A stretch of DNA of 64,000 nt, taken from the IMG/VR virus record IMGVR_UViG_3300045974_000132, positions 186,001 to 250,000 of that record; one strand, given 5' to 3'. The notes under the pieces were generated by a model. It was not told the DNA's origin. It did no database searches and saw only the letters and a program-made list of their open reading frames with translations. Below, piece after piece: positions 7,898 through 24,904 of the stretch. The translations under genes were made by a program, and so were the position numbers. Positions within the stretch are counted from its first letter, which is position 1. Each line of letters begins with the position of its first letter.

Positions 7898-10213
7898 CTA
7901 CATCATACTGTTTCCAACGCGCACTAATTCAAGCTCCATATTCTTCCGAGTAACATTTACGCATTCGTCAACCCACGGAAGATGCTTCTTATTACTGACC
8001 AGAACTGCCGTCGTCTTGACCCCTGGAGGTTTCTTGGCCTTAGTAGCTTCACTGATAGTCCCATATCCATCTGACACAAGTAGGCCTTGAGCATTGAGCC
8101 ACCCATACTTCAAGCAGACATCAAAGAAGGCTTGAAGCGCATCATCGAAGTCAGTGCCACCACCGCTCGGTGTAGATAGAGCTTGAGCCAATTCAGCTAG
8201 AGTTGGAACGCGCTGCCCTTTCTCCCAAACGTGTATGCTATCGACGCCTCCTGAGAACTTGATTAAGGCAATGCCTCGCTTAGACAGGTAGAGCTTATGA
8301 ATCATTGACAGACAGAAGCCTGCGGCCATTTCATAATAAGAGCCACCCATAGAGCCTGAACAATCTAGCATCAGTACAATAGGACCACGACGCGGGTCTA
8401 GGTCTGTGTATTGAAGCAAATTGCCGTTAGCTAAATCGACTAAGAATGACAGTCGCGCAAAGTCACTACCCAATCGGCCTAGTTCGGAAGCAGGAAGTCT
8501 AGTTAGGTCTGTACCGAACGTAAGAGTACGATCAATCATACCTTCATCATTCGGTTTGAACGAAGGCTTGACAATAAGCTTAGCCCCGAAGTCATGGGCT
8601 GACTTCAGAATAGCTTTGAAGATTTTGGGGTTGGAAGCAAGCGTATTAAGAGTTACAAGCTTACCGCCGCTGCCTCTACCTGTCCCTTGAGAAGGGGAAT
8701 CTTCATCAGGCATATCTCCGCCACCTAAAGCATCAACGTCAATATCTTCATCGTCGTTAGGAGCAGCGTCTGATCCAGCAGACTGTTTTCCTTTTGAAGG
8801 TTTTTCAGTATCCTCTGAACCATCCTCTGTTTCGCTATCGGTAGTTTCAGAGTTCGCATCGTCTTCTGAATTTTCAAAGTCTTCCTGATCGTCACTGTCC
8901 TGTTCACCCTTCTGCGATTTAGGTAGCTTTTCTTCGGCATCTGCTTCGTCATTCGCATCATCAGGTGCAAAGTCTTTAGCGAAGGTTTTAACATTGGCAT
9001 ACAGGTCTTCAATGTCAGCTAAGAACTCGCCCGCGTTTTTGAGAATGAAGCGAATCAGCTTTATCAGTTCGTGCCCACGATCATACCTAGGTGTATCAGA
9101 TACTAGGTTTATCGCAGATGATAGACAACCTGCTTTAGGATCAAAGCGTTTAACACGAACAGAGGGAATTGCTTTAAGCAAGTCAGGAAGCTTAGGTAGA
9201 GCTTCCAAAGCAGATTGCTTTTCCCGTAGTCGTTTAATACGGTGAGGAATACGATCAATCGAATCCTGAAGCTCACTCTGGGCAGACAAAGAATACTTAC
9301 GCTTTTTACGAAGCGTCACCAACTTCTGCTTAAGGTCGATTCTGCGCTCTTTGGCTCTAGAGATCAACCTGTCAATGTAGATGATCCTCTTCTCTACAAT
9401 CTTGTTGGCTTCATTCAGGGTGTTGACTAAATGAACAGCCGCAAACATTGCAAACTCAGGGTCGTCAAAAGCATCTATCTTGGTAAGAGTAGGCACTATC
9501 GAAAGTGTTTGGGTGTGCGATAGAACTCGATCAAAGCTTGAGTGAATCCACCTAGGAGACATTTGATAGTGGCGCACCCACAGATTACGCACGACTACAT
9601 CGGGATTGATATTGGGCAGATTCTGAAACTTGAATTCAGGGTAGTGCTTCCGAAGTTCTGAATAGTAAGCATCCTCATACTTGAACTTCAAAATCTCAGG
9701 ATGCAAAGCCTTAATGCCTAACGCATCACGCAACTGTTTAGCGATCTTGATAACGATAGGGTGACGCATGTGACTGTTAAAATGCTGAGGTAGCTTCGAC
9801 GGTAGAAGGGCACAGATTTGCTCAATCGAAAGAGCGTCATACTTAATAGAACGCAAGCCCTTGAACTTCACTGCCTGCACATCATACCCAAAGAACTCTC
9901 CTAGGTATTGATTGATCTTGTAGTCAGCAGCCGTATTCACAGTGTTGGCTCTATACACATGGAGGATTGATTCATCCTCAACTACTTCGTGCATAATCTC
10001 ATGTGCTACATACACTTCCAGATTGAAGGTATCTTCATCAACGCATTTGTCAGTCAGCTTAATCCCTACAGCATCAATACAAGCTACAGGAAAGCCGCAA
10101 GTTTTATGATCGACTATCTCAACAGGTAGGAACAGCACATCAGGCCCGAACTTTTGTGCCAGGCGCTGAAGTGCTGCTTCTACTGAACGCATCCTACGTT
10201 CATACGATTTCAT
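7898..10213 (-). CDS. VWA-domain protein (ViaA/CoxE-like) with an N-terminal HExxH metallopeptidase-like domain and an acidic linker
   Basis: AHEIMHE; MIDAS LDCSGSM, GGGTDF, VSDG; adjacent to a MoxR ATPase. Confidence 0.8.
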   Translation of the reverse strand: MKSYERRMRSVEAALQRLAQKFGPDVLFLPVEIVDHKTCGFPVACIDAVGIKLTDKCVDEDTFNLEVYVAHEIMHEVVEDESILHVYRANTVNTAADYKINQYLGEFFGYDVQAVKFKGLRSIKYDALSIEQICALLPSKLPQHFNSHMRHPIVIKIAKQLRDALGIKALHPEILKFKYEDAYYSELRKHYPEFKFQNLPNINPDVVVRNLWVRHYQMSPRWIHSSFDRVLSHTQTLSIVPTLTKIDAFDDPEFAMFAAVHLVNTLNEANKIVEKRIIYIDRLISRAKERRIDLKQKLVTLRKKRKYSLSAQSELQDSIDRIPHRIKRLREKQSALEALPKLPDLLKAIPSVRVKRFDPKAGCLSSAINLVSDTPRYDRGHELIKLIRFILKNAGEFLADIEDLYANVKTFAKDFAPDDANDEADAEEKLPKSQKGEQDSDDQEDFENSEDDANSETTDSETEDGSEDTEKPSKGKQSAGSDAAPNDDEDIDVDALGGGDMPDEDSPSQGTGRGSGGKLVTLNTLASNPKIFKAILKSAHDFGAKLIVKPSFKPNDEGMIDRTLTFGTDLTRLPASELGRLGSDFARLSFLVDLANGNLLQYTDLDPRRGPIVLMLDCSGSMGGSYYEMAAGFCLSMIHKLYLSKRGIALIKFSGGVDSIHVWEKGQRVPTLAELAQALSTPSGGGTDFDDALQAFFDVCLKYGWLNAQGLLVSDGYGTISEATKAKKPPGVKTTAVLVSNKKHLPWVDECVNVTRKNMELELVRVGNSMM

Positions 10214-10222
10214 TGCAATGCC

Positions 10223-11689
10223 CTATTCTGTTTTGGCAAGGGAAGAAACTTCAAGAGTGATACCTGCTTTGATGAACGTCTGCTTCAGGGTAGTTAGCTT
10301 GTGGTCGCTATACCAATAATTGGCCTTACGCTTGTGACGGAAGCCAAATGCACGAAGCTCCTTGCTAGACCATGACATGGTTGAAGACTGAGAAGCTTTG
10401 ATCTGAATCCCTGCCCCTACATGCACACGGATGATACGGAACACTTTGCGCTCTTTGATGATATGAGCGAAAGACATACCGATAGACTTGATTTCAGCAG
10501 CAGCTTGCCTAGCATACCGACTACTAAGCTTATTGACCTCTGCATACAATTTCTTCAATTCCGAAAGCTTGCTGCGAAGGTCACCGCCTTGTCCAATAGT
10601 CTCACGTAGGGCATGAGCGCGTTCCAAGTAAGTCGAAATCTCAGCGGTGTCGCCCGACGTATTGGAAAACACAATAGACTGAACCTTACTGACTTGCGCA
10701 GGCTCATTCCAGAAGATGTTTGCAAGCACCTCCAAGTCTTTGTTGATAATCTCAGAACGACCGTCGAGAATAGCAGCAGCTTGCATAACACGGAAGGACT
10801 TGATAAATCGACGATCACTGATTTTGATATTCAGAGCATACTCAACCTGACGGCGAATACGCATAGCCATATCACGCAGCTTATCCGGTAGCGTTACAGC
10901 ACGGGTAGTCTTACGAAGTTGCTCTACCTCAGGCGAAGTAAGATAGTGAGTTTCAATCAAGTCTGGGATGTCGAGAGACTTAGCAATCAGCTTGCGGACA
11001 TTCTCTTCGTCCTTCAGGTAGGCTACATTGAAGCGTAACAGAAAGCGATCATACAGTGCTTTCAGAATAGGGTCATTAGGCAGTTCGTTTGATGCTGCGA
11101 AAGTTGCCTTGACCTTACACTTGATAATCCCATTATCCCCGTCACGGAACAGATGCTCATTGATGATCCAGAGCAAAGGATTTAGGACAGTAGCATTTGA
11201 TTTGAAGATTTCGTCGAAGAACAGAATCTCACAATCGGGGGCATACCCAATGTATTTTGTTTGTTGTCTGCCCTGAGCTAGAGCCGGGATGTCCGTCGGC
11301 CCAAAAATCTGATCAGGTTTTACAGTCTCACTCATGAGGATGTCAAAGTTCGACAAGCCTAGTAGGGAAGACGCTGTTTGAATATGGAATGTCTTTGCAG
11401 TACCTACGTCACCGAAGAACAGAGCATTCGAGCCAGATAGAATACACAGTAGGATACCGTCTGTTTCATCGTGCCGTTCATACACGAACTCATTCAAGAC
11501 AGAACGAACCTTCTGCAATTTCTCAAACAAAGGGTTGTCGTACTTGACAGGGACTTCCTGGACAGCTTCTTCAAAAGCAGCAGCTTCCTTAACAGCTTTC
11601 TCAGCACGTTCCGCCTTAGTCGGTAGCGGCTTAGAGGGCCGTAACGATGGACGGTTGGAACTACGCAAAAGAGGTTTAGGTAGAGGCAT
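10223..11689 (-). CDS. MoxR-family (RavA-like) AAA+ ATPase
   Basis: GDVGTAKT Walker A, FFDEIFKS Walker B, ASNELP, ALYDRF. Confidence 0.9.
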   Translation of the reverse strand: MPLPKPLLRSSNRPSLRPSKPLPTKAERAEKAVKEAAAFEEAVQEVPVKYDNPLFEKLQKVRSVLNEFVYERHDETDGILLCILSGSNALFFGDVGTAKTFHIQTASSLLGLSNFDILMSETVKPDQIFGPTDIPALAQGRQQTKYIGYAPDCEILFFDEIFKSNATVLNPLLWIINEHLFRDGDNGIIKCKVKATFAASNELPNDPILKALYDRFLLRFNVAYLKDEENVRKLIAKSLDIPDLIETHYLTSPEVEQLRKTTRAVTLPDKLRDMAMRIRRQVEYALNIKISDRRFIKSFRVMQAAAILDGRSEIINKDLEVLANIFWNEPAQVSKVQSIVFSNTSGDTAEISTYLERAHALRETIGQGGDLRSKLSELKKLYAEVNKLSSRYARQAAAEIKSIGMSFAHIIKERKVFRIIRVHVGAGIQIKASQSSTMSWSSKELRAFGFRHKRKANYWYSDHKLTTLKQTFIKAGITLEVSSLAKTE

Positions 11690-11800: not shown

Positions 11801-12061
11801 TCAAAGAGTGAATTGACCTTCGGGAGGTTTCCACTTTGGGTCTGGCTGAAAGAACTGAGTTGAAGAGTAATTTGTCCAGCCGATCTTTGTTTTAAGGCCG
11901 ACCGGACAGTTCAAAGTCTTTGCTAAGTGGCTACCGCGATCTTTCCCACAAAGCAAACACTTATGGCAAATATTACTCTTCGTCTTCGTCGTCTCCGCTT
12001 TCTTCTTCGTCATCGTTACCCTTGTCACTATCTTTACCACCCTGTAGAGTGTATTCAACAA
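11801..12061 (-). CDS. small Cys/His hypothetical protein (start uncertain, overlaps the recA end)
   Basis: CLLCGK..H......C; ends just before the terminator. Confidence 0.4.
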   Translation of the reverse strand: MLNTLYRVVKIVTRVTMTKKKAETTKTKSNICHKCLLCGKDRGSHLAKTLNCPVGLKTKIGWTNYSSTQFFQPDPKWKPPEGQFTL

Positions 12062-13772
12062 AGAGGTCGATGCCGCGTCCGTTAGCGAGTTGAGCGAAAC
12101 ACTTGTCCCGAATCTTGACAGGCTTCATACCCACAGAGGCACAGATTTCCTTAATCTCAGCAGTCTTACCTAAGATAAGTTTCTTGAAGTCCATCCAAGA
12201 CATAAACTTCGTAGCTTCGTTACCTTCAAACATCAGCTTCATCTTGCGACGAGGGCCAGACACTTGACCGGTGAACTTCAGATACTGGAATACGTCGAAT
12301 ACTGGATCGAAGCCTTGTGCATTGCCCTTAGCATCAGTAATCCATAGACGCAGATACATTTCCAAGTACGGACGGCTGAGCTTGTTCTTGAATGCCCGAA
12401 CATGCAAGTAGCGATAGTTGTCCATACCTTTACCGTAAGTAGCGGAACGCTCAGATTCAATCTGGCCTTCACCCTTGACAGTCTCACCAAGGTGCTTACT
12501 AACAGCAGAGAGGGCGCGAGAGGTATGCTTCAGACGAACATCGCTGTAAAGCTTTAGTGCTTCACCGCAGGGCTCATATTCAGGATTACCCATCATCACC
12601 ATAGGACGCAAACGTAGCTGATTGATACCTAGGACAGCAATACGCTTACCCTTCATCTTACCCTTGACTCGACGAAGTTGCTCGGCAAACATACGAGCTT
12701 GAACACCGATAGAGCTATTCGGGTCATCAACGTCTTGTGTCTCAGGAAGCATAGCAGGATAGCTATCGACCAAAACCATAGCTTGCAGAGTACCGTCTTT
12801 AGCAGGGATGCGCCATAAGCCAGTCTTCTTGAAATAGTTCTTGTCGTACTTATCACCTACGATTGCTTGATTGGCTTTGTGAACCATCGACTTGCCCTTG
12901 ACCATCTTTTTGGACTCGTAGATGTAATACCAGTTTTCACCGATCTTCTTCTTATCAGGCAGCATACGCTGAAGCTGTGCCAGATAGTCGAAGAACTTTT
13001 CAGCGATAGCTTCTGAGTTGTAACGAACGCGAGGCTTGACAACCCAGTTGCCAGTCTTTTCATCCCGAACACCAAAGATGGATTTTACGTCAGCTTTAAC
13101 GCCCATGTTGCGCATGATGTTTTCGATGTAGTCAGGAGTAGCACTACCCTCGAAGTCAAAATACGACAAGATGGGAACATCAGAGTTCAGAGCCGCTGCA
13201 AGCATTGTTACCGCGTCAGTCGTCTTACACGACTGCTCTTGCCCGAAGTTTGTGTACCAGCCAGCAGTGATACCGCCACCTAGCACCAAGTCCATTGCAA
13301 GCGTACCTGTACTTTGGCGAGAATCGCTACCGTCCATTGAAGAAGCAGACAGACCGATGTGACGTTCGATTTCATCCAGCTGATTGTCAAGGTGGGCATA
13401 AGGATCAAAGTATTCAGTAGAAGCAAGAGCTTCAGCTTTGGTTTTCTTACGACCAGATACTACTACCTCTTCACCAGTTTCTGCTTTTGCACCGCGAGTT
13501 CTACGAGTAGGCTTTGTTTCAACAACTTCCTCAGCAGTTTTCCGAGAACGCCTTGTGGGCTTCTTCTCTTCAACCACTTCCTTAGAGGCCCGAGTAGTTC
13601 TACGCGCAGGCTTTGCTTCCTCAACAGGTGCTTTTGCAGTACGAGTTCTACGAGTAGGCTTTTCTTCTACTTCTTTAGCAGCCCGAGTACGACGCGCAGG
13701 TTGAGCTTCTTTTGTAGCAGCAGCAGAAGTACGACGACTACGTGCGGGTGGGGCTTCAGATTTTCTAGCCAT
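11973..13772 (-). CDS. recA: RecA/UvsX-like recombinase with a long Arg/Lys-rich N-terminal extension
   Basis: STGTLAMDLVLGGG, GQEQSCKTT, VLVDSYPAM, QARMF, INQLR, GEALKLYSDVRL, KNKL. Confidence 0.9.
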   Translation of the reverse strand: MARKSEAPPARSRRTSAAATKEAQPARRTRAAKEVEEKPTRRTRTAKAPVEEAKPARRTTRASKEVVEEKKPTRRSRKTAEEVVETKPTRRTRGAKAETGEEVVVSGRKKTKAEALASTEYFDPYAHLDNQLDEIERHIGLSASSMDGSDSRQSTGTLAMDLVLGGGITAGWYTNFGQEQSCKTTDAVTMLAAALNSDVPILSYFDFEGSATPDYIENIMRNMGVKADVKSIFGVRDEKTGNWVVKPRVRYNSEAIAEKFFDYLAQLQRMLPDKKKIGENWYYIYESKKMVKGKSMVHKANQAIVGDKYDKNYFKKTGLWRIPAKDGTLQAMVLVDSYPAMLPETQDVDDPNSSIGVQARMFAEQLRRVKGKMKGKRIAVLGINQLRLRPMVMMGNPEYEPCGEALKLYSDVRLKHTSRALSAVSKHLGETVKGEGQIESERSATYGKGMDNYRYLHVRAFKNKLSRPYLEMYLRLWITDAKGNAQGFDPVFDVFQYLKFTGQVSGPRRKMKLMFEGNEATKFMSWMDFKKLILGKTAEIKEICASVGMKPVKIRDKCFAQLANGRGIDLFVEYTLQGGKDSDKGNDDEEESGDDEDEE

Positions 13773-13835
13773 TATCACTTCCCTTAAATGAGTAAAGGGC
13801 TCGACCTTTTACAGCCAAGCCCCTGTACTTAGAAG

Positions 13836-15173
13836 TTAAAAAGGAATGTCGTCCTCTTCATCCTCGTCATCTTCATCACGCGACTTACGAGCAGGCTTCT
13901 TGGCAGGAGCCTTCTTAGGAGGAGCCTTCTTTGCGGGTGCGGCCTTCTTTACACCACGCTTGGGAGCGGGTTCATCATCCTCGTCGTCTTCGTCATCCAG
14001 ATCGTCGTCTTCATCATCGTCGAGGTCTTCATCATCCTCGTCGTCATCCTCGTCATCTTCATCACGGGAAGAACGCTTCTTGGAAGGAGCCGCTTTCTTT
14101 GCAGTAGCTTTCTTACCACGAGCAGGCGGTTCATCATCCTCGTCATCATCGTCGAGGTCTTCGTCATCCTCGTCGTCATCCTCGTCGTCATCCTCGTCTT
14201 CGTCACGCGAAGGACGCTTCTTGGAAGGAGCCTTCTTAGGAGGAGCCTTCTTTGCGCCGCGCTTAGGGGCCGGCTCGTCATCTTCGTCATCGTCGTCGAG
14301 GTCTTCATCATCCTCGTCGTCTTCGTCTTCATCATCGTCGAAGAATTCTTTACCCTTCTTTGCGGGAGCACCCTTCTTTGCAGGCGCTTTCTTCTTCTTA
14401 CCGCCTAGGTCATCCCCGTCATCATCGTCATCACCTTCGCCGTCAAATTCTTCGGCACCGACGATTTGCATAGAATCAAGTTGCTTCTTAGCAATAGCAG
14501 GGCTTTCAAGACCCATTTCCGTCAACAGCTCCGGATTCAGATCATAGACCAGATACCCGAGTTGTTCTTCAGTCAGCGGAGACTTGTCAGCTAGGTTGAT
14601 CTGATACTTGTCGCCACCCTTTGCTTTTTCATCGTAGCGGATATTAATGTCAATACCGTACTTAGCATCACTGATATGGAACGTCTTCTTAGCGCCCTTG
14701 ATAACACGCTTGTTGAGTTCCTTCAGGTCTTGAATCTTACGCATCAAGGTAGCAGTAATACGCATTACCTTAACAGGAGTCCAAGAGTTGCTAGACAGCT
14801 CCTTGAAGCCTGTCTTCTTTTCTTCCGGAGTAATACGAGCCTTACCCGGCTTTTCTTCTTCAACAGAGCGAACGATAACGTTCGCCAGATAGTTGACAGA
14901 AGTTTGGCTTTCAATAGTGCAGTATGGGCACTTGCAACCCTTCTTGCTCTCTTCCGTGATCGGGTCGAAAGAAACGCACAGCTTAGGAATCTTAACTTCG
15001 CGCTTAGTCTTACCTGCGAGAATATTAATCCAGTGAGTCTTCATTGCCAAAATGTCATTCGGCATAATACGAAGTTGAACCCACTTACCGTTCGGCAGTT
15101 TCAAAACATCGACAAGGTCTTCCAGTCGAGCATGGTCACCGCGTGTTTGAGGCTTGGCATCACCTAATTTCAT
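13836..15173 (-). CDS. probable single-stranded DNA-binding protein (gp32-like N-domain) with a long acidic/basic tail ending DDIPF
   Basis: next to recA; H..C/CPYC Zn-site-like residues; C-terminal DDIPF identical to the bacterial SSB tip. Confidence 0.7.
   Translation of the reverse strand: MKLGDAKPQTRGDHARLEDLVDVLKLPNGKWVQLRIMPNDILAMKTHWINILAGKTKREVKIPKLCVSFDPITEESKKGCKCPYCTIESQTSVNYLANVIVRSVEEEKPGKARITPEEKKTGFKELSSNSWTPVKVMRITATLMRKIQDLKELNKRVIKGAKKTFHISDAKYGIDINIRYDEKAKGGDKYQINLADKSPLTEEQLGYLVYDLNPELLTEMGLESPAIAKKQLDSMQIVGAEEFDGEGDDDDDGDDLGGKKKKAPAKKGAPAKKGKEFFDDDEDEDDEDDEDLDDDDEDDEPAPKRGAKKAPPKKAPSKKRPSRDEDEDDDEDDDEDDEDLDDDDEDDEPPARGKKATAKKAAPSKKRSSRDEDDEDDDEDDEDLDDDEDDDLDDEDDEDDEPAPKRGVKKAAPAKKAPPKKAPAKKPARKSRDEDDEDEEDDIPF
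13850..14450. repeat. imperfect coding repeats (e.g. CATCGTCGAGGTCTTC) encoding alternating D/E blocks and KKAP blocks
   Basis: visible in both DNA and translation. Confidence 0.85.
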
Positions 15174-15207
15174 TACAACTCCTTGTATTAAAATAGTACA
15201 ACATTAA

Positions 15208-16320
15208 TTATTTACAGTTACGTGTAGGTTGCACTGAAGCAGCCGCTACTAAAGCACTTTCAACACCTTTAGTCGGCATGAAGCCTAACTGTTTCTTCAT
15301 AGATCGAAGCATTCTGATCTTTTCCTTTCTAGATATATACTCGTCAAGGTCGAGATACAAACGAGCAATACCTAGATTGTCTGCACTTTTTATAAGATAG
15401 AGAAGAGTGGCAGACTCTTGGTCATCCTCTATCTGTCGATCAACACCCTGACAACCTACTAAGAAGTGCTTTAAGTCTATAGCACCTTCATCTTCGTTGT
15501 CACTCATTACGCTATCCAGGCTTACACTGAAGTTTACCTGAGACGCTTTAGTACCTTGTACATTCCTCTTTTGCAACTGAGGCATTGTATAAGCGATACC
15601 GTACTCATGCCCATAGTTGGCATTTGAATACGTTTGAGCATTTAGAATCCAATAGTTTATGTAACTGGTGAGAGCTCCTTTACTACTATCGTATTTATCA
15701 ATAGCTTTAGTAATTGCCGCCATTAAGCTTTGATAAACGTCTTTGAAGTCAAAGTTTCCAGTCTTTTGTTTGCAGAACGCATGGGCTTGCTTGTAACCAT
15801 GCTTTAGATACTGCTCCACAATGTTATTTCTAAAGGTATACGCGAGTTCAACGTAGTGCCTACATATGTTCAATGTAGAAAACAAGTGGTCGCGTGTAAA
15901 TCCTACGGTACGTTCTATAGCCTGCAACTTAAGGTCTAGGGTGGTTCGCTCCATGTGCTTGGAGCAAGTAAGGTATTTGGTATATAGATCCGTGTAATCT
16001 TCTGTTTCCGAAAGGAAGTTCACAAGGAAACTATATACAAAGCTGCGTTCAATCTTTGCTTTAGATAAAAGGTCTATCTTCCGATCAAGATCAGTAGTGG
16101 TAAGTACATTGCACAGACAGACAATGAATACTTCCCGCTCTAGGGCAGAGATTTTTCTTTTCTTGTTTGTTGCAGCTACACCTAATAGATGGGCTACTTG
16201 TATATCAAATACCTGACTATGGCGAATAATGGGTTCAAGACCCTTATAGATAAGGAAATCAAGAGCTTCCTGTATCTGCCCACCGGTCAGGTTTGAAGTG
16301 TCAATGGGCTTTTTATCCAT
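15208..16320 (-). CDS. phage sigma70-family sigma factor (divergent)
   Basis: region 2 DVYQSLMAAITKAIDKYDSSKGALTSYINYWI; region 3.2-like VSLDSVMSDNEDE. Confidence 0.75.
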   Translation of the reverse strand: MDKKPIDTSNLTGGQIQEALDFLIYKGLEPIIRHSQVFDIQVAHLLGVAATNKKRKISALEREVFIVCLCNVLTTTDLDRKIDLLSKAKIERSFVYSFLVNFLSETEDYTDLYTKYLTCSKHMERTTLDLKLQAIERTVGFTRDHLFSTLNICRHYVELAYTFRNNIVEQYLKHGYKQAHAFCKQKTGNFDFKDVYQSLMAAITKAIDKYDSSKGALTSYINYWILNAQTYSNANYGHEYGIAYTMPQLQKRNVQGTKASQVNFSVSLDSVMSDNEDEGAIDLKHFLVGCQGVDRQIEDDQESATLLYLIKSADNLGIARLYLDLDEYISRKEKIRMLRSMKKQLGFMPTKGVESALVAAASVQPTRNCK

Positions 16321-16377
16321 ACGATACCTTGAGTAAGTGTGTTATACTGATTCTTTTACAGTATCGCTAGTTTTATG

Positions 16378-16917
16378 TTACATGTGTTCTTCAATAACAG
16401 TACCAGCTAGTCTAACTAGGTGCTTGCACAGCATAGGTTGAAGCTGAGGATTGGTAACATTTGGGTGTTCACCGTTGGAATACTTGATCTTAGCACTACC
16501 CCAATGGTTTAGAGCTACCTCACAGTAGTAAAGGAAGTAGTCGCATTGGCAGGATACCAGAACATGCTTCTGCCTAGACAGAGGAATATCCTTTTCCTTA
16601 CCGATAATATCAGTAGCGTACACATTGCGCTGACCTTTATTACCAACAGACAACACCTTTGCACGAATAGCCGGAAAGCCACCCTTGGTGGTAGCCGGCT
16701 TTAGCATCTTGACCAACACTTCATGAGCATTGTTTTTGATGAAAGGCGGGGTAGCACGAATCAAAGCTTTAAGGCTTAAGCCATCTAGCTTATAATCTAT
16801 TGTCTCAGGCTTTGCTTTACCACGAGGTGCAGGGGCTACCTTGTCACGTTTTACCTGAACCGGACTGGGCTTTGTCTGAGCTACGCGTCTTCCTGCTTTA
16901 ATAGTAATCTTTGCCAC
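16378..16917 (-). CDS. SWIM-type zinc finger protein
   Basis: VSCQCDYF...LCKHL. Confidence 0.7.
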   Translation of the reverse strand: MAKITIKAGRRVAQTKPSPVQVKRDKVAPAPRGKAKPETIDYKLDGLSLKALIRATPPFIKNNAHEVLVKMLKPATTKGGFPAIRAKVLSVGNKGQRNVYATDIIGKEKDIPLSRQKHVLVSCQCDYFLYYCEVALNHWGSAKIKYSNGEHPNVTNPQLQPMLCKHLVRLAGTVIEEHM

Positions 16918-23798: not shown

Positions 23799-23860
23799 AG
23801 TTGTGTTATCCAGATACTGTAAAAGTAATGTACTTGATTCAAATTATGGTCGATGTAAAA

Positions 23861-24904
23861 ATGGCACAAGACATAGACAACTTCGATGTGATTAGGGACG
23901 CTCTTCATCAGTATGGAGGACGGCAGAAGCCTGCAGGCGATTGGAGAATGATTCAATGCCCATTCCCTGACCACAATGACGGTGGACCTTCATGTGGCGT
24001 GTATATGCGGCGTGACGGTAGAGCTAAATTAGGATTCTTCAACTGTTTGGGCTGCGGGAAGAAAGGCGGATGGAATACATTAGCAGGCGTTGCAAATCTC
24101 CCGACAATCCAAGAATGGAATAATGCGGAAAAAAGCGTCGGTGAAGTAATCTCTAAAGCAGATGAAGAAAGTTTGCTGGGTGATCAAAGTTTGACAGTAC
24201 GCCGAGTGCTTAAAATAATGAAGTGTGAAGAAGCGCAGCCCTGGCCTGAGAATATACCTTGGCGTGGATTCAAAGGTAATCTACTTCGCTTGGTAGGCGG
24301 TCTGATTATCAATGACTACTACAATGATTCTATTGCAGCTTTATTCCCTGTACGCATCGCAGGTAAAGTCAGAGGCGCTGTCAAAGCAGTATATGAGAAG
24401 AAGACTAAAGAGCAGTTAGGTTATATCACAATGTCAGGAGAATGGGTAAACAGTTACGGACTGTTCCCATTTGAGTTTACCAAGAAGTTGATTGATAAAT
24501 ATCATTACAACTTTGTGATATTGGTTGAAGGGCCACGTGATGCACTTCGCTTATTGAAGCTCGGAATTCCAGCACTAGCTGTGTTAGGTGCAAATACGAT
24601 CGGTCGTACTAAAGCTCTTTACATTAGCAGCTTAGGCGTAGATACATATTATGTTATGCCTGATAATGATATGGGCGGTACAAAACTGTGGAAGAATCTG
24701 AAGGAAGCTCTAGGTAGAAAGAAATGCAATGTAAAGCAGTTGAAGCTTCCGAAAGAAAAAGGAGAGGACGGTAAAGTAATAAAGATGGATCCGTTCAATG
24801 CCCCACGTGAGGTAATATCTAATTTAAAGACTCTGTTGAGAGAACGTCACGGCTGGGCTAATGAAGACATATATGCAATTCAGACGCGAAAGGTTGGTGT
24901 ATGA
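23861..24904 (+). CDS. DNA primase (Zn finger + TOPRIM)
   Basis: CPFPDH...CLGC; VEGPRDA; PDND. Confidence 0.85.
   Translation: MAQDIDNFDVIRDALHQYGGRQKPAGDWRMIQCPFPDHNDGGPSCGVYMRRDGRAKLGFFNCLGCGKKGGWNTLAGVANLPTIQEWNNAEKSVGEVISKADEESLLGDQSLTVRRVLKIMKCEEAQPWPENIPWRGFKGNLLRLVGGLIINDYYNDSIAALFPVRIAGKVRGAVKAVYEKKTKEQLGYITMSGEWVNSYGLFPFEFTKKLIDKYHYNFVILVEGPRDALRLLKLGIPALAVLGANTIGRTKALYISSLGVDTYYVMPDNDMGGTKLWKNLKEALGRKKCNVKQLKLPKEKGEDGKVIKMDPFNAPREVISNLKTLLRERHGWANEDIYAIQTRKVGV

What the first reader, a model, noticed from the sequence alone, without database searches (positions are those of the whole stretch)
13836..15173. SSB-like protein with a ~200 aa charge-block tail ending in the host SSB tip DDIPF
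Seen: several long D/E runs alternate with KKAP/KR-rich blocks, then DDIPF. Known: the bacterial SSB tip (DDDIPF) recruits partners such as RecQ, PriA, Pol III chi and ExoI; alternating charge blocks drive phase separation in nucleolar proteins. Inference: the protein recruits host repair and replication enzymes and may scaffold a condensate-type replication compartment.
Basis: partly seen in the sequence, partly recalled or inferred. Interest (0 to 1): 0.6.

Follow-up and report, generated by a model that had tools for sequence, protein, structure and literature searches.

The report
Phage gp32-type SSB, charge-block tail
This gene encodes a pond jumbo phage's T4-gp32-type single-stranded-DNA-binding protein whose 205-residue disordered tail alternates acidic and basic blocks (a trait of its whole phage family) and, in this lineage, ends in the same ...DDIPF peptide that bacterial SSBs use to dock repair and replication enzymes.

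Summary
The ORF is on the minus strand, 13836-15173, and encodes 445 aa. Residues 241-445 form five acidic blocks alternating with four basic blocks (net charge -55, kappa 0.66 against 0.18 for shuffles) and end in DDIPF.

The core is not a bacterial-type SSB. It has the T4/RB69 gp32 fold with a conserved His-Cys3 pattern, and it belongs to PHROG 15004, the SSB of PaBG/Lu11/Yoloswag/Motura-type jumbo phages. The gene always sits next to a RecA/UvsX-like gene, usually in the order sigma factor, SSB, RecA-like.

The charge-block tail is a family-wide feature, present in nearly all 60 homologs examined. The tip is lineage-specific:
- An acidic run followed by [I/V/E]-P-F marks the window's clade (P and F in 20/20 distinct sequences) and two other deep lineages, including cultured Achromobacter phage Motura.
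- Erwinia, Dickeya, Yersinia and Salmonella phages end in poly-K.
- PaBG and Lu11 end in WDDDE.

The phage encodes its own Pol A, DnaB-type helicase, DnaG-type primase and recombinase. Whether the tip binds host or phage partners therefore stays open. Condensate scaffolding is plausible from composition and from in-vitro precedents (E. coli SSB, T4 gp32/UvsX), but it is untested.

Verdict: a new variant of a known kind, of moderate interest.

The parts
13836..15173 (-). Complete SSB gene (445 codons plus TAA stop)
   Evidence: ORF list and translation. PHROG 15004 'single strand DNA binding protein', E 3.4e-79.
15179..15184 (-). Ribosome-binding site AAGGAG, 5 nt before the ATG at 15173
   Evidence: Read directly from the sequence. 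No promoter or terminator consensus above chance in 13600-16500, so the gene is probably co-transcribed with its neighbours.
14454..15173 (-). Core domain, residues 1-240: gp32-type OB fold
   Evidence: AF2 model pLDDT 87.8, pTM 0.83. Foldseek: RB69 gp32 2a1k E 2.5e-6 and T4 gp32 1gpc E 4.8e-5, probability 1.0. VIA-align: Z 9.8 (8gme_B) and 9.1 (2atq_B), next best 4.2. BFVD hits are phage SSBs.
14919..15035 (-). Putative zinc site: H47, C66, C82, C85
   Evidence: H47, C66 and C82 are invariant and C85 is at least 90% conserved in 30 homologs. hhalign places C82-x2-C85 on T4 gp32 C87-x2-C90 plus the following strand, at low probability. The identity of the T4 ligands comes from my own knowledge. 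Metal binding was not tested.
13839..14453 (-). Disordered polyampholyte tail, residues 241-445: five acidic and four basic blocks
   Evidence: Charge statistics. Full-length AF2 gives pLDDT 38-50 and no secondary structure over 241-445. The same architecture occurs in nearly all homologs.
14011..14339 (-). 141-nt tandem repeat (47 aa, one acidic plus one basic block), 2.4 copies, 78% match
   Evidence: Tandem Repeats Finder. Relatives with identical cores differ in block number (P0009 against P0010-12).
13839..13877 (-). C-terminal tip, residues 433-445: ten D/E residues then I-P-F (SSB-Ct-like docking peptide)
   Evidence: Translation. Tip logo over 20 distinct PF-ending sequences: F 20/20, P 20/20, position -3 I/E/V, positions -4 to -6 D/E. 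P444 and F445 are invariant and D442 is at least 90% conserved in the PF-clade alignment.
11973..13778 (-). Downstream neighbour: RecA/UvsX-like recombinase. It has a ~110-aa Arg-rich N-terminal repeat extension (net +18) and an acidic C-tip. The likely true start is the ATG at 13772.
   Evidence: Pfam RecA 1.7e-22 and PHROG 97 UvsX-like 3.4e-42. N-terminal extension analysis. Start context. SSB followed by a RecA-like gene occurs in 16 of the 17 cultured loci and the P0016 contig (BCSR5's record ends just after the SSB gene), directly adjacent in most; a sigma-factor gene lies upstream in most.
15208..16320 (-). Upstream neighbour: phage sigma-70-like factor
   Evidence: Sigma70_r2 6.7e-7 and PHROG 17569 3.8e-95.
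23801..24904 (+). The phage's own DnaG-type primase (context: the replisome looks self-sufficient)
   Evidence: Toprim_2 at 31.5 bits, over the cut-off, and Zn_ribbon_DnaG at 19 bits, below the cut-off, in one 367-aa ORF (ORF list).

Best explanation
This is the sole recognisable ssDNA-binding protein of a 286-kb freshwater jumbo phage. A monomer-type gp32-class OB core, probably zinc-stabilised, coats ssDNA at phage replication forks and recombination intermediates. Its C-terminus is a greatly expanded version of the gp32 'acidic C-domain': a 205-aa disordered polyampholyte built by tandem duplication of one acidic-plus-basic unit.

Inferred mechanism:
(1) In the free protein, the acidic blocks fold back on the basic DNA-binding cleft or on the tail's own basic blocks, as described for the T4 gp32 C-domain and the E. 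coli SSB-Ct. This gates DNA binding.
(2) On ssDNA the tails are released as a dense charged brush. Its blocks make multivalent electrostatic contacts with neighbouring tails and with basic disordered extensions of phage partners, notably the Arg-rich N-terminus of the adjacent RecA/UvsX-like recombinase. This concentrates the replication and recombination machinery.
(3) The exposed terminal acidic-IPF peptide acts as an SSB-Ct-type docking motif, with Pro-Phe and the free carboxylate fitting a basic-rimmed hydrophobic pocket. It most likely brings host SSB-interacting enzymes to phage ssDNA, or titrates them away from host SSB.

Shown: gene, fold class, conserved His/Cys pattern, tail composition and pattern, predicted disorder, tip identity and conservation, synteny, and the phage's replication gene set. 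Inferred: ssDNA binding, zinc binding, fold-back, partner identity, and any condensate.
For: SSB identity and fold: PHROG 15004 E 3e-79; gp32 and RB69 gp32 are the top structural matches, well separated from generic OB folds; phage SSBs dominate the BFVD hits; H47, C66, C82 and C85 are conserved; no bacterial-type SSB was found elsewhere in the complete genome.

Tail as a selected feature: kappa 0.66 against 0.18 for shuffles. The pattern is present in nearly all of 60 homologs from at least 9 host genera, with a median of 5 acidic and 5 basic blocks and kappa 0.62, although the residues used differ: K/A/P-rich here, RGG-like in P0018, S/K-rich in P0020, K/S-rich in the Erwinia phages. Predicted disordered.

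Tip as a selected feature: P and F in 20/20 distinct sequences, with acidic residues at -4 to -6. The tip defines a clade with 99/98 support and recurs in Motura and P0033. It is retained in P0020, where the high-density D/E blocks are replaced by a Ser/Gly-rich, weakly charged linker. The chance of ending in I-P-F from tail composition alone is about 9e-6.

Precedents: the gp32 acidic C-domain binds at or near its own DNA site (PMC5892887 abstract). SSB-Ct recruits at least 17 partners (PMC10018359 abstract). Phage SSB-like proteins ending in (F)DDDIPF have been linked to host SbcB.

No phage gene gain or loss tracks the PF tip in a six-genome contrast: the only candidates were a PhoH-like ATPase, a P-loop kinase-like protein, unknowns and an HD hydrolase. 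This weakly favours host partners.
Against: The host is unknown; the sequence comes from pond metagenomes. The phage encodes Pol A, a DnaB-like helicase, a DnaG-like primase and a RecA-like recombinase, so there is no obvious gap for host enzymes to fill. Relatives infecting Erwinia, Dickeya, Yersinia and Salmonella, whose own SSBs I expect from my own knowledge to end in DDDIPF, use poly-K tips, so mimicry is not needed by the family. Seven of the 20 PF tips have Glu instead of Ile/Val at -3, which may weaken a canonical SSB-Ct contact. There is no sequence-level link to gp32 (hhalign probability 2.7%). The N-terminus lacks an obvious gp32-like basic cooperativity motif. No binding, zinc or biophysical data exist.
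Confidence: 0.5

Rival explanations
1. The PF tip serves phage-encoded partners, not host ones. Above all it would load the adjacent RecA/UvsX-like recombinase, or the phage Pol A, helicase or primase, onto SSB-coated ssDNA, as T7 gp2.5 and the HK620 SSB do with their own partners.
For: SSB followed by a RecA-like gene is conserved across nearly the whole family. In HK620 the last six residues (NDYPPF) of an SSB encoded next to the RecA-like sak4 gene are required for Sak4 binding to SSB-coated ssDNA and for stimulation of its annealing (PMC5928155). The phage has a full replisome of its own. From my own knowledge, T7 gp2.5's acidic tail ending in Phe binds T7 polymerase and helicase; the Sak4 paper cites Kong and Richardson 1998 for this.
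Against: The same partners are conserved in sister clades whose tips are poly-K or WDDDE, which carry opposite charge, so one conserved pocket is unlikely. The tip matches the universal bacterial motif in three separate lineages, which a purely phage-internal contact does not explain. No gene co-occurs with the PF tip. The one complex prediction that was run gave no answer and counts neither way.
Confidence: 0.3
2. The tail is only an autoregulatory flap and spacer: an ssDNA mimic that blocks dsDNA binding and sets cooperativity, as in T4 gp32. It has no scaffold or condensate role, and the block number drifts through repeat slippage.
For: The gp32 C-domain precedent (PMC5892887). The net charge of -55 disfavours homotypic coacervation. 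Tail length ranges from 50 to about 270 aa in intact homologs and differs between relatives with identical cores. The DNA contains a tandem repeat.
Against: An acidic flap does not need regularly interspersed basic blocks, yet the alternation is kept across the family with different residue chemistries. Partner proteins carry complementary charged extensions: the RecA-like basic N-terminus is family-wide and is expanded here, and a 364-aa protein carries the same Arg-rich repeat plus an acidic tail. T4 gp32 and UvsX, and E. coli SSB, do demix in vitro.
Confidence: 0.3
3. The tip is a decoy. Many copies of a host-like SSB-Ct, on a protein that coats only phage ssDNA or floats free, would titrate host SSB-interacting nucleases and helicases (ExoI, RecJ, RecQ) and replication restart factors. 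This would protect phage ssDNA, shut down host DNA metabolism, or interfere with defence systems that read SSB or ExoI status.
For: A phage SSB-like protein with FDDDIPF and host SbcB jointly control DRT10 defence. The same protein activates DRT4. Phage SSBs are toxic to E. coli (PMC13687109). The strongly acidic, DNA-like tail is specific to PF-tipped and acidic-tipped lineages, with net charge -30 to -78 in the charge-block PF tails (P0020 excepted) against about 0 in poly-K lineages.
Against: There is no direct evidence. It is hard to distinguish from productive recruitment. The host and its defence repertoire are unknown.
Confidence: 0.15
4. The tail is non-functional low-complexity expansion and the DDIPF ending is a coincidence.
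For: Repeat-driven, fast-evolving sequence. Tips vary widely between clades.
Against: P and F are invariant across a clade whose cores diverge to about 45% identity. The charge pattern is retained in nearly all homologs. The chance of I-P-F arising from composition is about 1e-5.
Confidence: 0.04

Closest known systems
T4 / RB69 gp32 (helix-destabilising protein)
   Same: Same core fold (Foldseek probability 1.0; Z 9.1-9.8). An equivalent His-Cys3 pattern, with C-x2-C aligning to T4 C87/C90. A disordered acidic C-terminal region. The gene is partnered with a UvsX/RecA-like recombinase.
   Different: No detectable sequence homology. The tail is about four times longer and alternates acidic with basic blocks instead of being a single acidic region. 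It ends in IPF, whereas T4 gp32 ends in ...LNDL. It lacks T4's N-terminal KRKST-type motif.
Bacterial SSB (E. coli type): OB tetramer, disordered linker and SSB-Ct tip
   Same: The modular logic of DNA-binding core, long disordered linker and acidic tip ending in D-D-I-P-F. The E. coli protein's linker and tip drive partner recruitment and phase separation (abstracts of PMC10018359 and 10.1101/797431).
   Different: The core is a different OB family; PF00436 is not matched. The linker is a highly charged polyampholyte, not Gly/Gln/Pro-rich. The oligomeric state is probably different (not testable here).
PHROG 15004 SSBs of PaBG, Lu11, NCTB, Yoloswag, Y3, Dickeya JA/AD1, phiRSL1, BcepSauron and Motura jumbo phages
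   Same: True homologs with 30-44% core identity in 95 phage records. The same pairing with a RecA-like gene and the same charge-block tail. Motura also ends in ...DDDIPF.
   Different: Most cultured members end in poly-K, WDDDE, acidic or other tips and have near-neutral tails. The window's clade is known only from metagenomes. The papers I searched do not discuss the tail.
HK620 SSB / Sak4 pair and T7 gp2.5
   Same: Phage SSBs whose acidic C-termini ending in Phe are essential for loading the phage's own partner proteins. The HK620 ssb gene lies next to a RecA-like gene.
   Different: They have different SSB folds and short tails without charge blocks. Partner dependence has been demonstrated for them, but not here.
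Bas52_0087 and prophage DUF669 SSB-like proteins ending in (F)DDDIPF
   Same: Non-canonical phage ssDNA-binding proteins that copy the host SSB C-tip and are proposed to contact host SSB partners such as SbcB.
   Different: They have a different domain architecture (multi-OB or DUF669), are not gp32-class, and have no charge-block tail.
Eukaryotic nucleolar charge-block proteins
   Same: Alternating D/E and K tracts. A Rhizobium phage homolog is even auto-annotated 'Nop14-like family protein'.
   Different: The resemblance is compositional only, with no homology. The annotation is an artefact of low complexity.

Membership tests
gp32-type phage SSB (structural class) | OB-fold core with gp32 topology | tested here: met
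   Foldseek 2a1k E 2.5e-6 and 1gpc E 4.8e-5. VIA Z 9.8 and 9.1, next best 4.2. The model has pLDDT 87.8.
gp32-type phage SSB (structural class) | Zinc-binding His-Cys3 subdomain | tested here: inconclusive
   H47, C66 and C82 are invariant and C85 is at least 90% conserved. C82/C85 align to T4 C87/C90 at low hhalign probability.
gp32-type phage SSB (structural class) | Sequence membership in the curated gp32 family or similarity to solved gp32 chains | tested here: not met
   No Pfam family at E <= 0.1. The profile found nothing against PDB sequences at E <= 10. hhalign probability 2.7%. It is therefore a structural relative and a separate sequence family.
gp32-type phage SSB (structural class) | Basic N-terminal cooperativity motif (T4 KRKST type) | tested here: not met
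   The window protein's N-terminus, MKLGDAKPQTRGD..., has no such cluster, whereas T4 begins MFKRKST. Checked by inspection only.
gp32-type phage SSB (structural class) | Disordered acidic C-terminal domain | tested here: met
   The tail has net charge -55 and pLDDT 38-50. It is expanded and interspersed with basic blocks.
Bacterial SSB family (PF00436) | SSB-type OB domain | tested here: not met
   No PF00436 hit for the protein or anywhere in the phage genome.
Bacterial SSB family (PF00436) | C-terminal SSB-Ct: acidic run, hydrophobic residue, Pro, terminal Phe | tested here: met
   ...EEDDIPF at the extreme C-terminus. Clade logo. The consensus DDDIPF is quoted in PMC5872125.
Bacterial SSB family (PF00436) | The tip binds SSB-interacting proteins | not testable with these tools
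   The host is unknown. The single complex job, run against the phage RecA-like core, gave no verdict.
PHROG 15004 (jumbo-phage SSB) | Profile match over the core and into the tail | tested here: met
   E 3.4e-79, residues 7-382 against profile positions 12-384 of 421. 95 phage records hold homologs.
PHROG 15004 (jumbo-phage SSB) | Gene order: SSB followed by a RecA/UvsX-like gene, usually with a sigma factor upstream | tested here: met
   Window. A RecA-like gene follows the SSB gene in 16 of 17 cultured loci and the P0016 contig (BCSR5's record ends just after the SSB gene), with one extra ORF between them in Vibrio GR7B and KoPa-5 and a small 105-nt ORF in PhiXhv-16; a sigma factor is annotated upstream in most loci.
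Phase-separating charge-patterned disordered regions | Disorder, a high fraction of charged residues, and strong charge segregation | tested here: met
   Fraction of charged residues 0.67; kappa 0.66 against 0.18 for shuffles; pLDDT below 50.
Phase-separating charge-patterned disordered regions | Actual demixing or focus formation | not testable with these tools
   Only precedents exist: E. coli SSB and T4 gp32/UvsX with PEG.

The most novel reading that the evidence does not exclude
Non-nucleus-forming jumbo phages of the PaBG/Lu11/Motura assemblage organise replication and recombination in an electrostatically driven, membrane-less compartment. Its scaffold would be the SSB's block-polyampholyte tail, with the Arg/Lys-rich disordered extensions of the RecA-like recombinase and other 'sticker' proteins as co-scaffolds (for example the 364-aa protein that carries the same EEKPxRRxR repeats plus an acidic W-DDDE-tipped tail). 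Interchangeable C-terminal tips (acidic-IPF, poly-K, WDDDE) would act as lineage-specific address labels, and the IPF label would import host SSB-interacting enzymes into the compartment.
Probability: 0.18. Interest if true: 0.8.

Novelty: new variant of a known kind. Interest (0 to 1): 0.5.

Why it matters
Three known ideas meet in one protein: a gp32-class core, the bacterial SSB-Ct docking tip, and a strongly charge-patterned disordered region.

If the tip recruits host enzymes, this would be mimicry of the central hub peptide of bacterial genome maintenance by an unrelated SSB class. It has been gained or retained in at least three phage lineages. It is relevant to how jumbo phages without a protein nucleus take over or shield DNA metabolism, and to defence systems that sense phage SSBs or ExoI status.

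If the block pattern drives assembly, the family offers a natural series for testing charge-pattern rules of condensate formation in bacteria. Block number runs from 2 to 8 and net charge from about +18 to -85, with three or more tip types. Cultured, genetically accessible members include Motura/Achromobacter, PaBG/Pseudomonas and Yoloswag/Erwinia.

It also flags an annotation trap, since some homologs are labelled 'hypothetical' or 'Nop14-like'.

Tried and rejected
This is not evidence either way.
- Sequence-level links to solved structures or Pfam: none. hhalign against T4 gp32 gave only a 28-column local match at 2.7% probability.
- Near-identical DNA in cultured phages: none.
- Host identification: only 'pond' and 'freshwater' metagenome labels. 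No host was assigned. The seven phage tRNAs were not used further.
- Phylogenetic-profile contrast for a phage partner that tracks the PF tip. Genes shared by G000 and Motura but absent from BCSR5, BcepSauron, PaBG and NCTB were a PhoH-like ATPase, a P-loop kinase-like protein, three unknowns and one shadow ORF. The reverse contrast gave only an HD phosphohydrolase. No candidate emerged, but only two PF genomes were used, so power is low.
- Tail-length polymorphism in reads: the Logan contigs fragment in the repeat, and low-complexity cross-mapping swamps the signal, so there was no clean indel call.
- Promoter and terminator scan: counts at chance level.
- Pol III alpha and RNase_T/DnaQ/ExoI-type domains were searched for in the phage and not found. 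Pol III chi, RecQ, PriA, RecO and RecJ families were not searched.
- Rejected idea: that the protein is a bacterial-type SSB acquired from the host. The fold and the family scans contradict it.
- Rejected idea: that tip mimicry correlates with enterobacterial hosts. Those phages have poly-K tips.
- The large representative-protein search and the atlas search were not used, because the family was already clear.
Full report
1. OBSERVATION

Coordinates 13836-15173 hold one 445-codon ORF on the minus strand. It has an AAGGAG ribosome-binding site 5 nt before the ATG. The N-terminal ~240 residues are ordinary globular sequence.

Residues 241-445 are 67% charged and are arranged as five acidic blocks (net -11, -21, -23, -28, -10) separated by four K/A/P-rich basic blocks (+8, +9, +8, +13). 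Net charge is -55. The charge-segregation parameter kappa is 0.66, against 0.18 +/- 0.03 for 500 shuffles of the same residues. The protein ends in ...DEDDEDEEDDIPF.

At the DNA level the tail contains a 141-nt unit (one acidic plus one basic block) in 2.4 tandem copies. Logan contigs from the source run tile the repetitive stretch with no differences, and a second pond-metagenome study contains identical pieces, so the tail is not an assembly artefact. The only correction is the strand.

2. WHAT THE PROTEIN IS

Pfam finds nothing. PHROG 15004, 'single strand DNA binding protein', matches at E 3.4e-79, and the match runs into the tail. tblastn finds the core at 30-44% identity in 95 cultured jumbo-phage records: PaBG, Lu11, NCTB, Yoloswag, Y3, the Dickeya JA/AD1 phages, fHe-Yen9-02, phiRSL1, BcepSauron, Motura and others.

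An AlphaFold2 model of residues 1-250, built with a 30-sequence alignment, is confident (pLDDT 87.8, pTM 0.83). Its best matches among solved structures are RB69 and T4 gp32:
- Foldseek gives E 2.5e-6 and 4.8e-5, probability 1.0.
- An independent all-against-representatives search gives Z 9.8 and 9.1, with the next hit, a generic OB fold, at 4.2.
- Among viral models, family members come first, followed by many phage SSBs.

H47, C66 and C82 are invariant and C85 is nearly so across the family. hhalign's only local match to T4 gp32 places C82-x2-C85 on T4's C87-x2-C90 and the following beta-strand. The protein is therefore a gp32-class, probably zinc-stabilised, OB-fold SSB. It is not a bacterial-type SSB, and it forms a sequence family of its own.

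The window lies in a complete 286,393-bp virus record with terminal repeats from pond and freshwater metagenomes. No PF00436 SSB exists in that genome, so this is the phage's only recognisable SSB.

3. CONTEXT

The gene sits between a phage sigma-70-like factor (15208-16320) and a RecA/UvsX-like recombinase (11973-13778). A RecA-like gene follows the SSB gene in 16 of the 17 cultured loci inspected and in a 181-kb metagenomic relative (the BCSR5 record ends just after its SSB gene), directly adjacent in most, and a sigma-factor gene lies upstream in most. No promoter or terminator consensus stands out, so co-transcription is likely.

The phage also encodes a family-A DNA polymerase, a DnaB-type helicase and a DnaG-type primase, which lies in the window at 23801-24904. 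It has no Pol III alpha and no DnaQ/ExoI-type exonuclease domain.

4. THE TAIL IS A FAMILY TRAIT, THE TIP IS NOT

I translated 17 cultured homologs and collected 42 metagenomic ones. Nearly all have alternating acidic and basic blocks. The medians are 5 acidic and 5 basic blocks, a charged-residue fraction of 0.66 and kappa of 0.62.

The residues that build the blocks differ between relatives: K/A/P here, RGG-like Arg/Gly in P0018, Ser/Lys in P0020, Lys/Ser in the Erwinia phages. Relatives with identical cores differ in block number. This is the signature of selection on charge pattern rather than on sequence, with repeat slippage supplying the variation.

The C-terminal tips fall into classes:
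- An acidic run plus [I/V/E]-P-F.
- W-DDD(D)E, in PaBG and Lu11.
- Poly-K, in Erwinia, Dickeya, Yersinia, Salmonella and Vibrio phages.
- A poly-K run ending in F.
- Purely acidic, in phiRSL1 and BcepSauron.
- S/R-rich.

On a maximum-likelihood tree of the cores, the PF tip marks a clade with 99/98 support. Eighteen of its 19 members have the tip, and the exception, P0015, is a frameshift read-through into the RecA-like gene. The tip also occurs in two other deep lineages: P0033 and cultured Achromobacter phage Motura.

Within the 20 distinct PF-ending sequences, F and P are invariant, position -3 is I, V or E, and positions -4 to -6 are D or E. P444 and F445 are among the very few invariant tail columns. 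P0020 keeps DDDIPF even though its tail has become a Ser/Gly-rich linker of low charge density. The tip is thus a selected element in its own right.

PF-tipped tails are strongly net-negative (-30 to -78, P0020's Ser/Gly-rich tail excepted). Poly-K-tipped tails are about neutral.

5. MECHANISM

The full-length fold predicts the whole tail to be disordered (pLDDT 38-50, no secondary structure).

By analogy with T4 gp32, the acidic blocks most likely gate DNA binding in the free protein and are released on ssDNA. The T4 acidic C-domain binds at or near its own DNA site and is the contact surface for other replication and recombination proteins (PMC5892887 abstract; discussion in PMC5928155).

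The terminal acidic-IPF peptide matches the bacterial SSB-Ct (DDDIPF; PMC5872125). In E. coli, SSB-Ct docks at least 17 partners (PMC10018359 abstract).

Copying of this tip by non-canonical phage ssDNA-binding proteins has recently been reported. Examples are Bas52_0087, which ends in FDDDIPF and is genetically linked to host SbcB, and prophage DUF669 proteins. I therefore rate 'a functional docking peptide' as likely (about 0.7).

Which partner it docks remains open. Points for host partners:
- The exact universal motif recurs in three lineages.
- Sister clades with the same phage replisome carry tips of opposite charge.
- No phage gene gain or loss tracks the tip in a six-genome contrast.

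Points for phage partners:
- The replisome and recombinase are self-encoded.
- The RecA-like gene is always adjacent or nearly so.
- In HK620, the SSB's last six residues are needed to load the neighbouring RecA-like Sak4.

The single complex-prediction job (tip against the RecA-like core) returned no verdict.

6. THE CONDENSATE IDEA

The tail has the composition and patterning typical of associative polyampholytes. E. coli SSB and T4 gp32/UvsX both demix in vitro.

There is new circumstantial support from possible partners. Every RecA-like homolog in the family has a basic N-terminal extension and a short acidic C-tip. In this phage the extension is expanded to about 110 aa, with six EEKPTRRTR-type repeats and net charge +18.

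A second protein elsewhere in the genome (364 aa, PHROG 22271, unknown function) carries the same kind of Arg-rich repeat. It also has a ~100-aa acidic tail ending in ...WGDDDE, which is the tip class used by the PaBG and Lu11 SSBs.

These complementary charged modules are what a multivalent electrostatic network would need. Against this, the -55 net charge argues against self-coacervation, and no localisation or biophysical data exist. I put a genuine compartment-scaffolding role at about 0.2-0.3.

7. COMPARISON AND NOVELTY

The protein works like gp32 (core, regulatory acidic C-region, recombinase partner) with an E. coli-SSB-style linker-plus-tip logic grafted on. It is a member of PHROG 15004, a structural but not sequence member of the gp32 class, and not a member of the bacterial SSB family.

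The family and its SSB annotation are known, and tip mimicry by phage SSB-like proteins is known. Not described in the papers I could search are:
- The family-wide block-polyampholyte tail.
- Its interchangeable tips.
- The occurrence of the bacterial SSB-Ct on a gp32-class protein.

Hence 'new variant of a known kind', with interest 0.5.

8. LIMITS

- The host was not identified.
- Zinc-site geometry could not be measured, because no model coordinates were available.
- The T7 gp2.5 details, the identity of the T4 zinc ligands, and the statement that enterobacterial hosts' own SSBs end in DDDIPF rest on my own knowledge plus the citations noted.
- The phylogenetic-profile test used only two PF-tipped genomes.

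Noticed in passing
window 13440-13772 (minus strand; N-terminus of the RecA/UvsX-like ORF 11973-13778): The recombinase carries a ~110-aa disordered N-terminal extension of about six EEKPTRRTR-type Arg-rich repeats (34 K+R, 16 D+E, net +18) and an acidic C-tip (...SGDDEDEE). All family homologs have a shorter basic N-extension and an acidic C-tip. The listed GTG start is probably wrong, and the ATG at 13772 (MARK...) fits the homologs.
   Followed up: partly
L022:3018-4112 (minus strand) = genome C1:171017-172111, outside the window: A 364-aa protein (PHROG 22271, unknown function) has N-terminal EEKPARGRR repeats like those of the RecA-like protein, a small globular domain, and a ~100-aa D/E tail ending in ...DEDWGDDDE. 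That is the tip class of the PaBG and Lu11 SSBs.
   Followed up: partly
L022:2555-2929 (minus strand) = genome C1:~170554-170928: An adjacent 124-aa Ala/Lys/Pro-rich basic protein with AKAAPAK repeats (histone-H1/AlgP-like composition). No family hit.
   Followed up: no
window 7898-11689 (minus strand): Two genes lie downstream of the recombinase gene: a MoxR-type AAA+ ATPase (bpMoxR, AAA_lid_8) and a 771-aa protein with a C-terminal VWA domain and a weak HNH-like N-terminal match. This is a MoxR-VWA pair in a phage replication/recombination neighbourhood.
   Followed up: no
P0015 (metagenomic homolog, 610 aa): The SSB reading frame leaves the tail just before the last acidic block and runs through the intergenic region into the RecA-like gene, whose N-terminus also has PRRSRKP-type repeats. 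This is probably a frameshift error in low-complexity DNA, or less likely a natural SSB-recombinase fusion.
   Followed up: partly
L013:1753-3222 (Xanthomonas phage PhiXhv-16): The annotated homolog has a ~60-residue poly-D run followed by (MT)n and a poly-M run. This looks like a frameshift or sequencing problem inside the GAT repeat, so its true C-terminus is unknown.
   Followed up: no
L016:1741-3024 (Rhizobium phage RHph_N46): The SSB homolog is annotated 'Nop14-like family protein', a compositional false positive caused by the charge blocks. Many Erwinia phage homologs are annotated 'hypothetical protein'.
   Followed up: no
genome C1:158456-158530 (minus strand), outside the window: ARAGORN reports one of the seven phage tRNAs as 'tRNA-???' with a four-base anticodon (tgca). 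It could be a frameshift-suppressor-like tRNA or a mis-call.
   Followed up: no
window 13846-14547 (+ strand): A 233-aa poly-Ser ORF lies antisense to the tail. It is a shadow of the GAT/GAA-rich coding strand and not a gene.
   Followed up: yes
window 13974-14375: In pond metagenomes, contig depth over the tail rises 10- to 100-fold because unrelated D/E-repeat-coding DNA cross-maps there. Logan assemblies also break inside the repeat. This is a caution for abundance estimates on such genes.
   Followed up: yes
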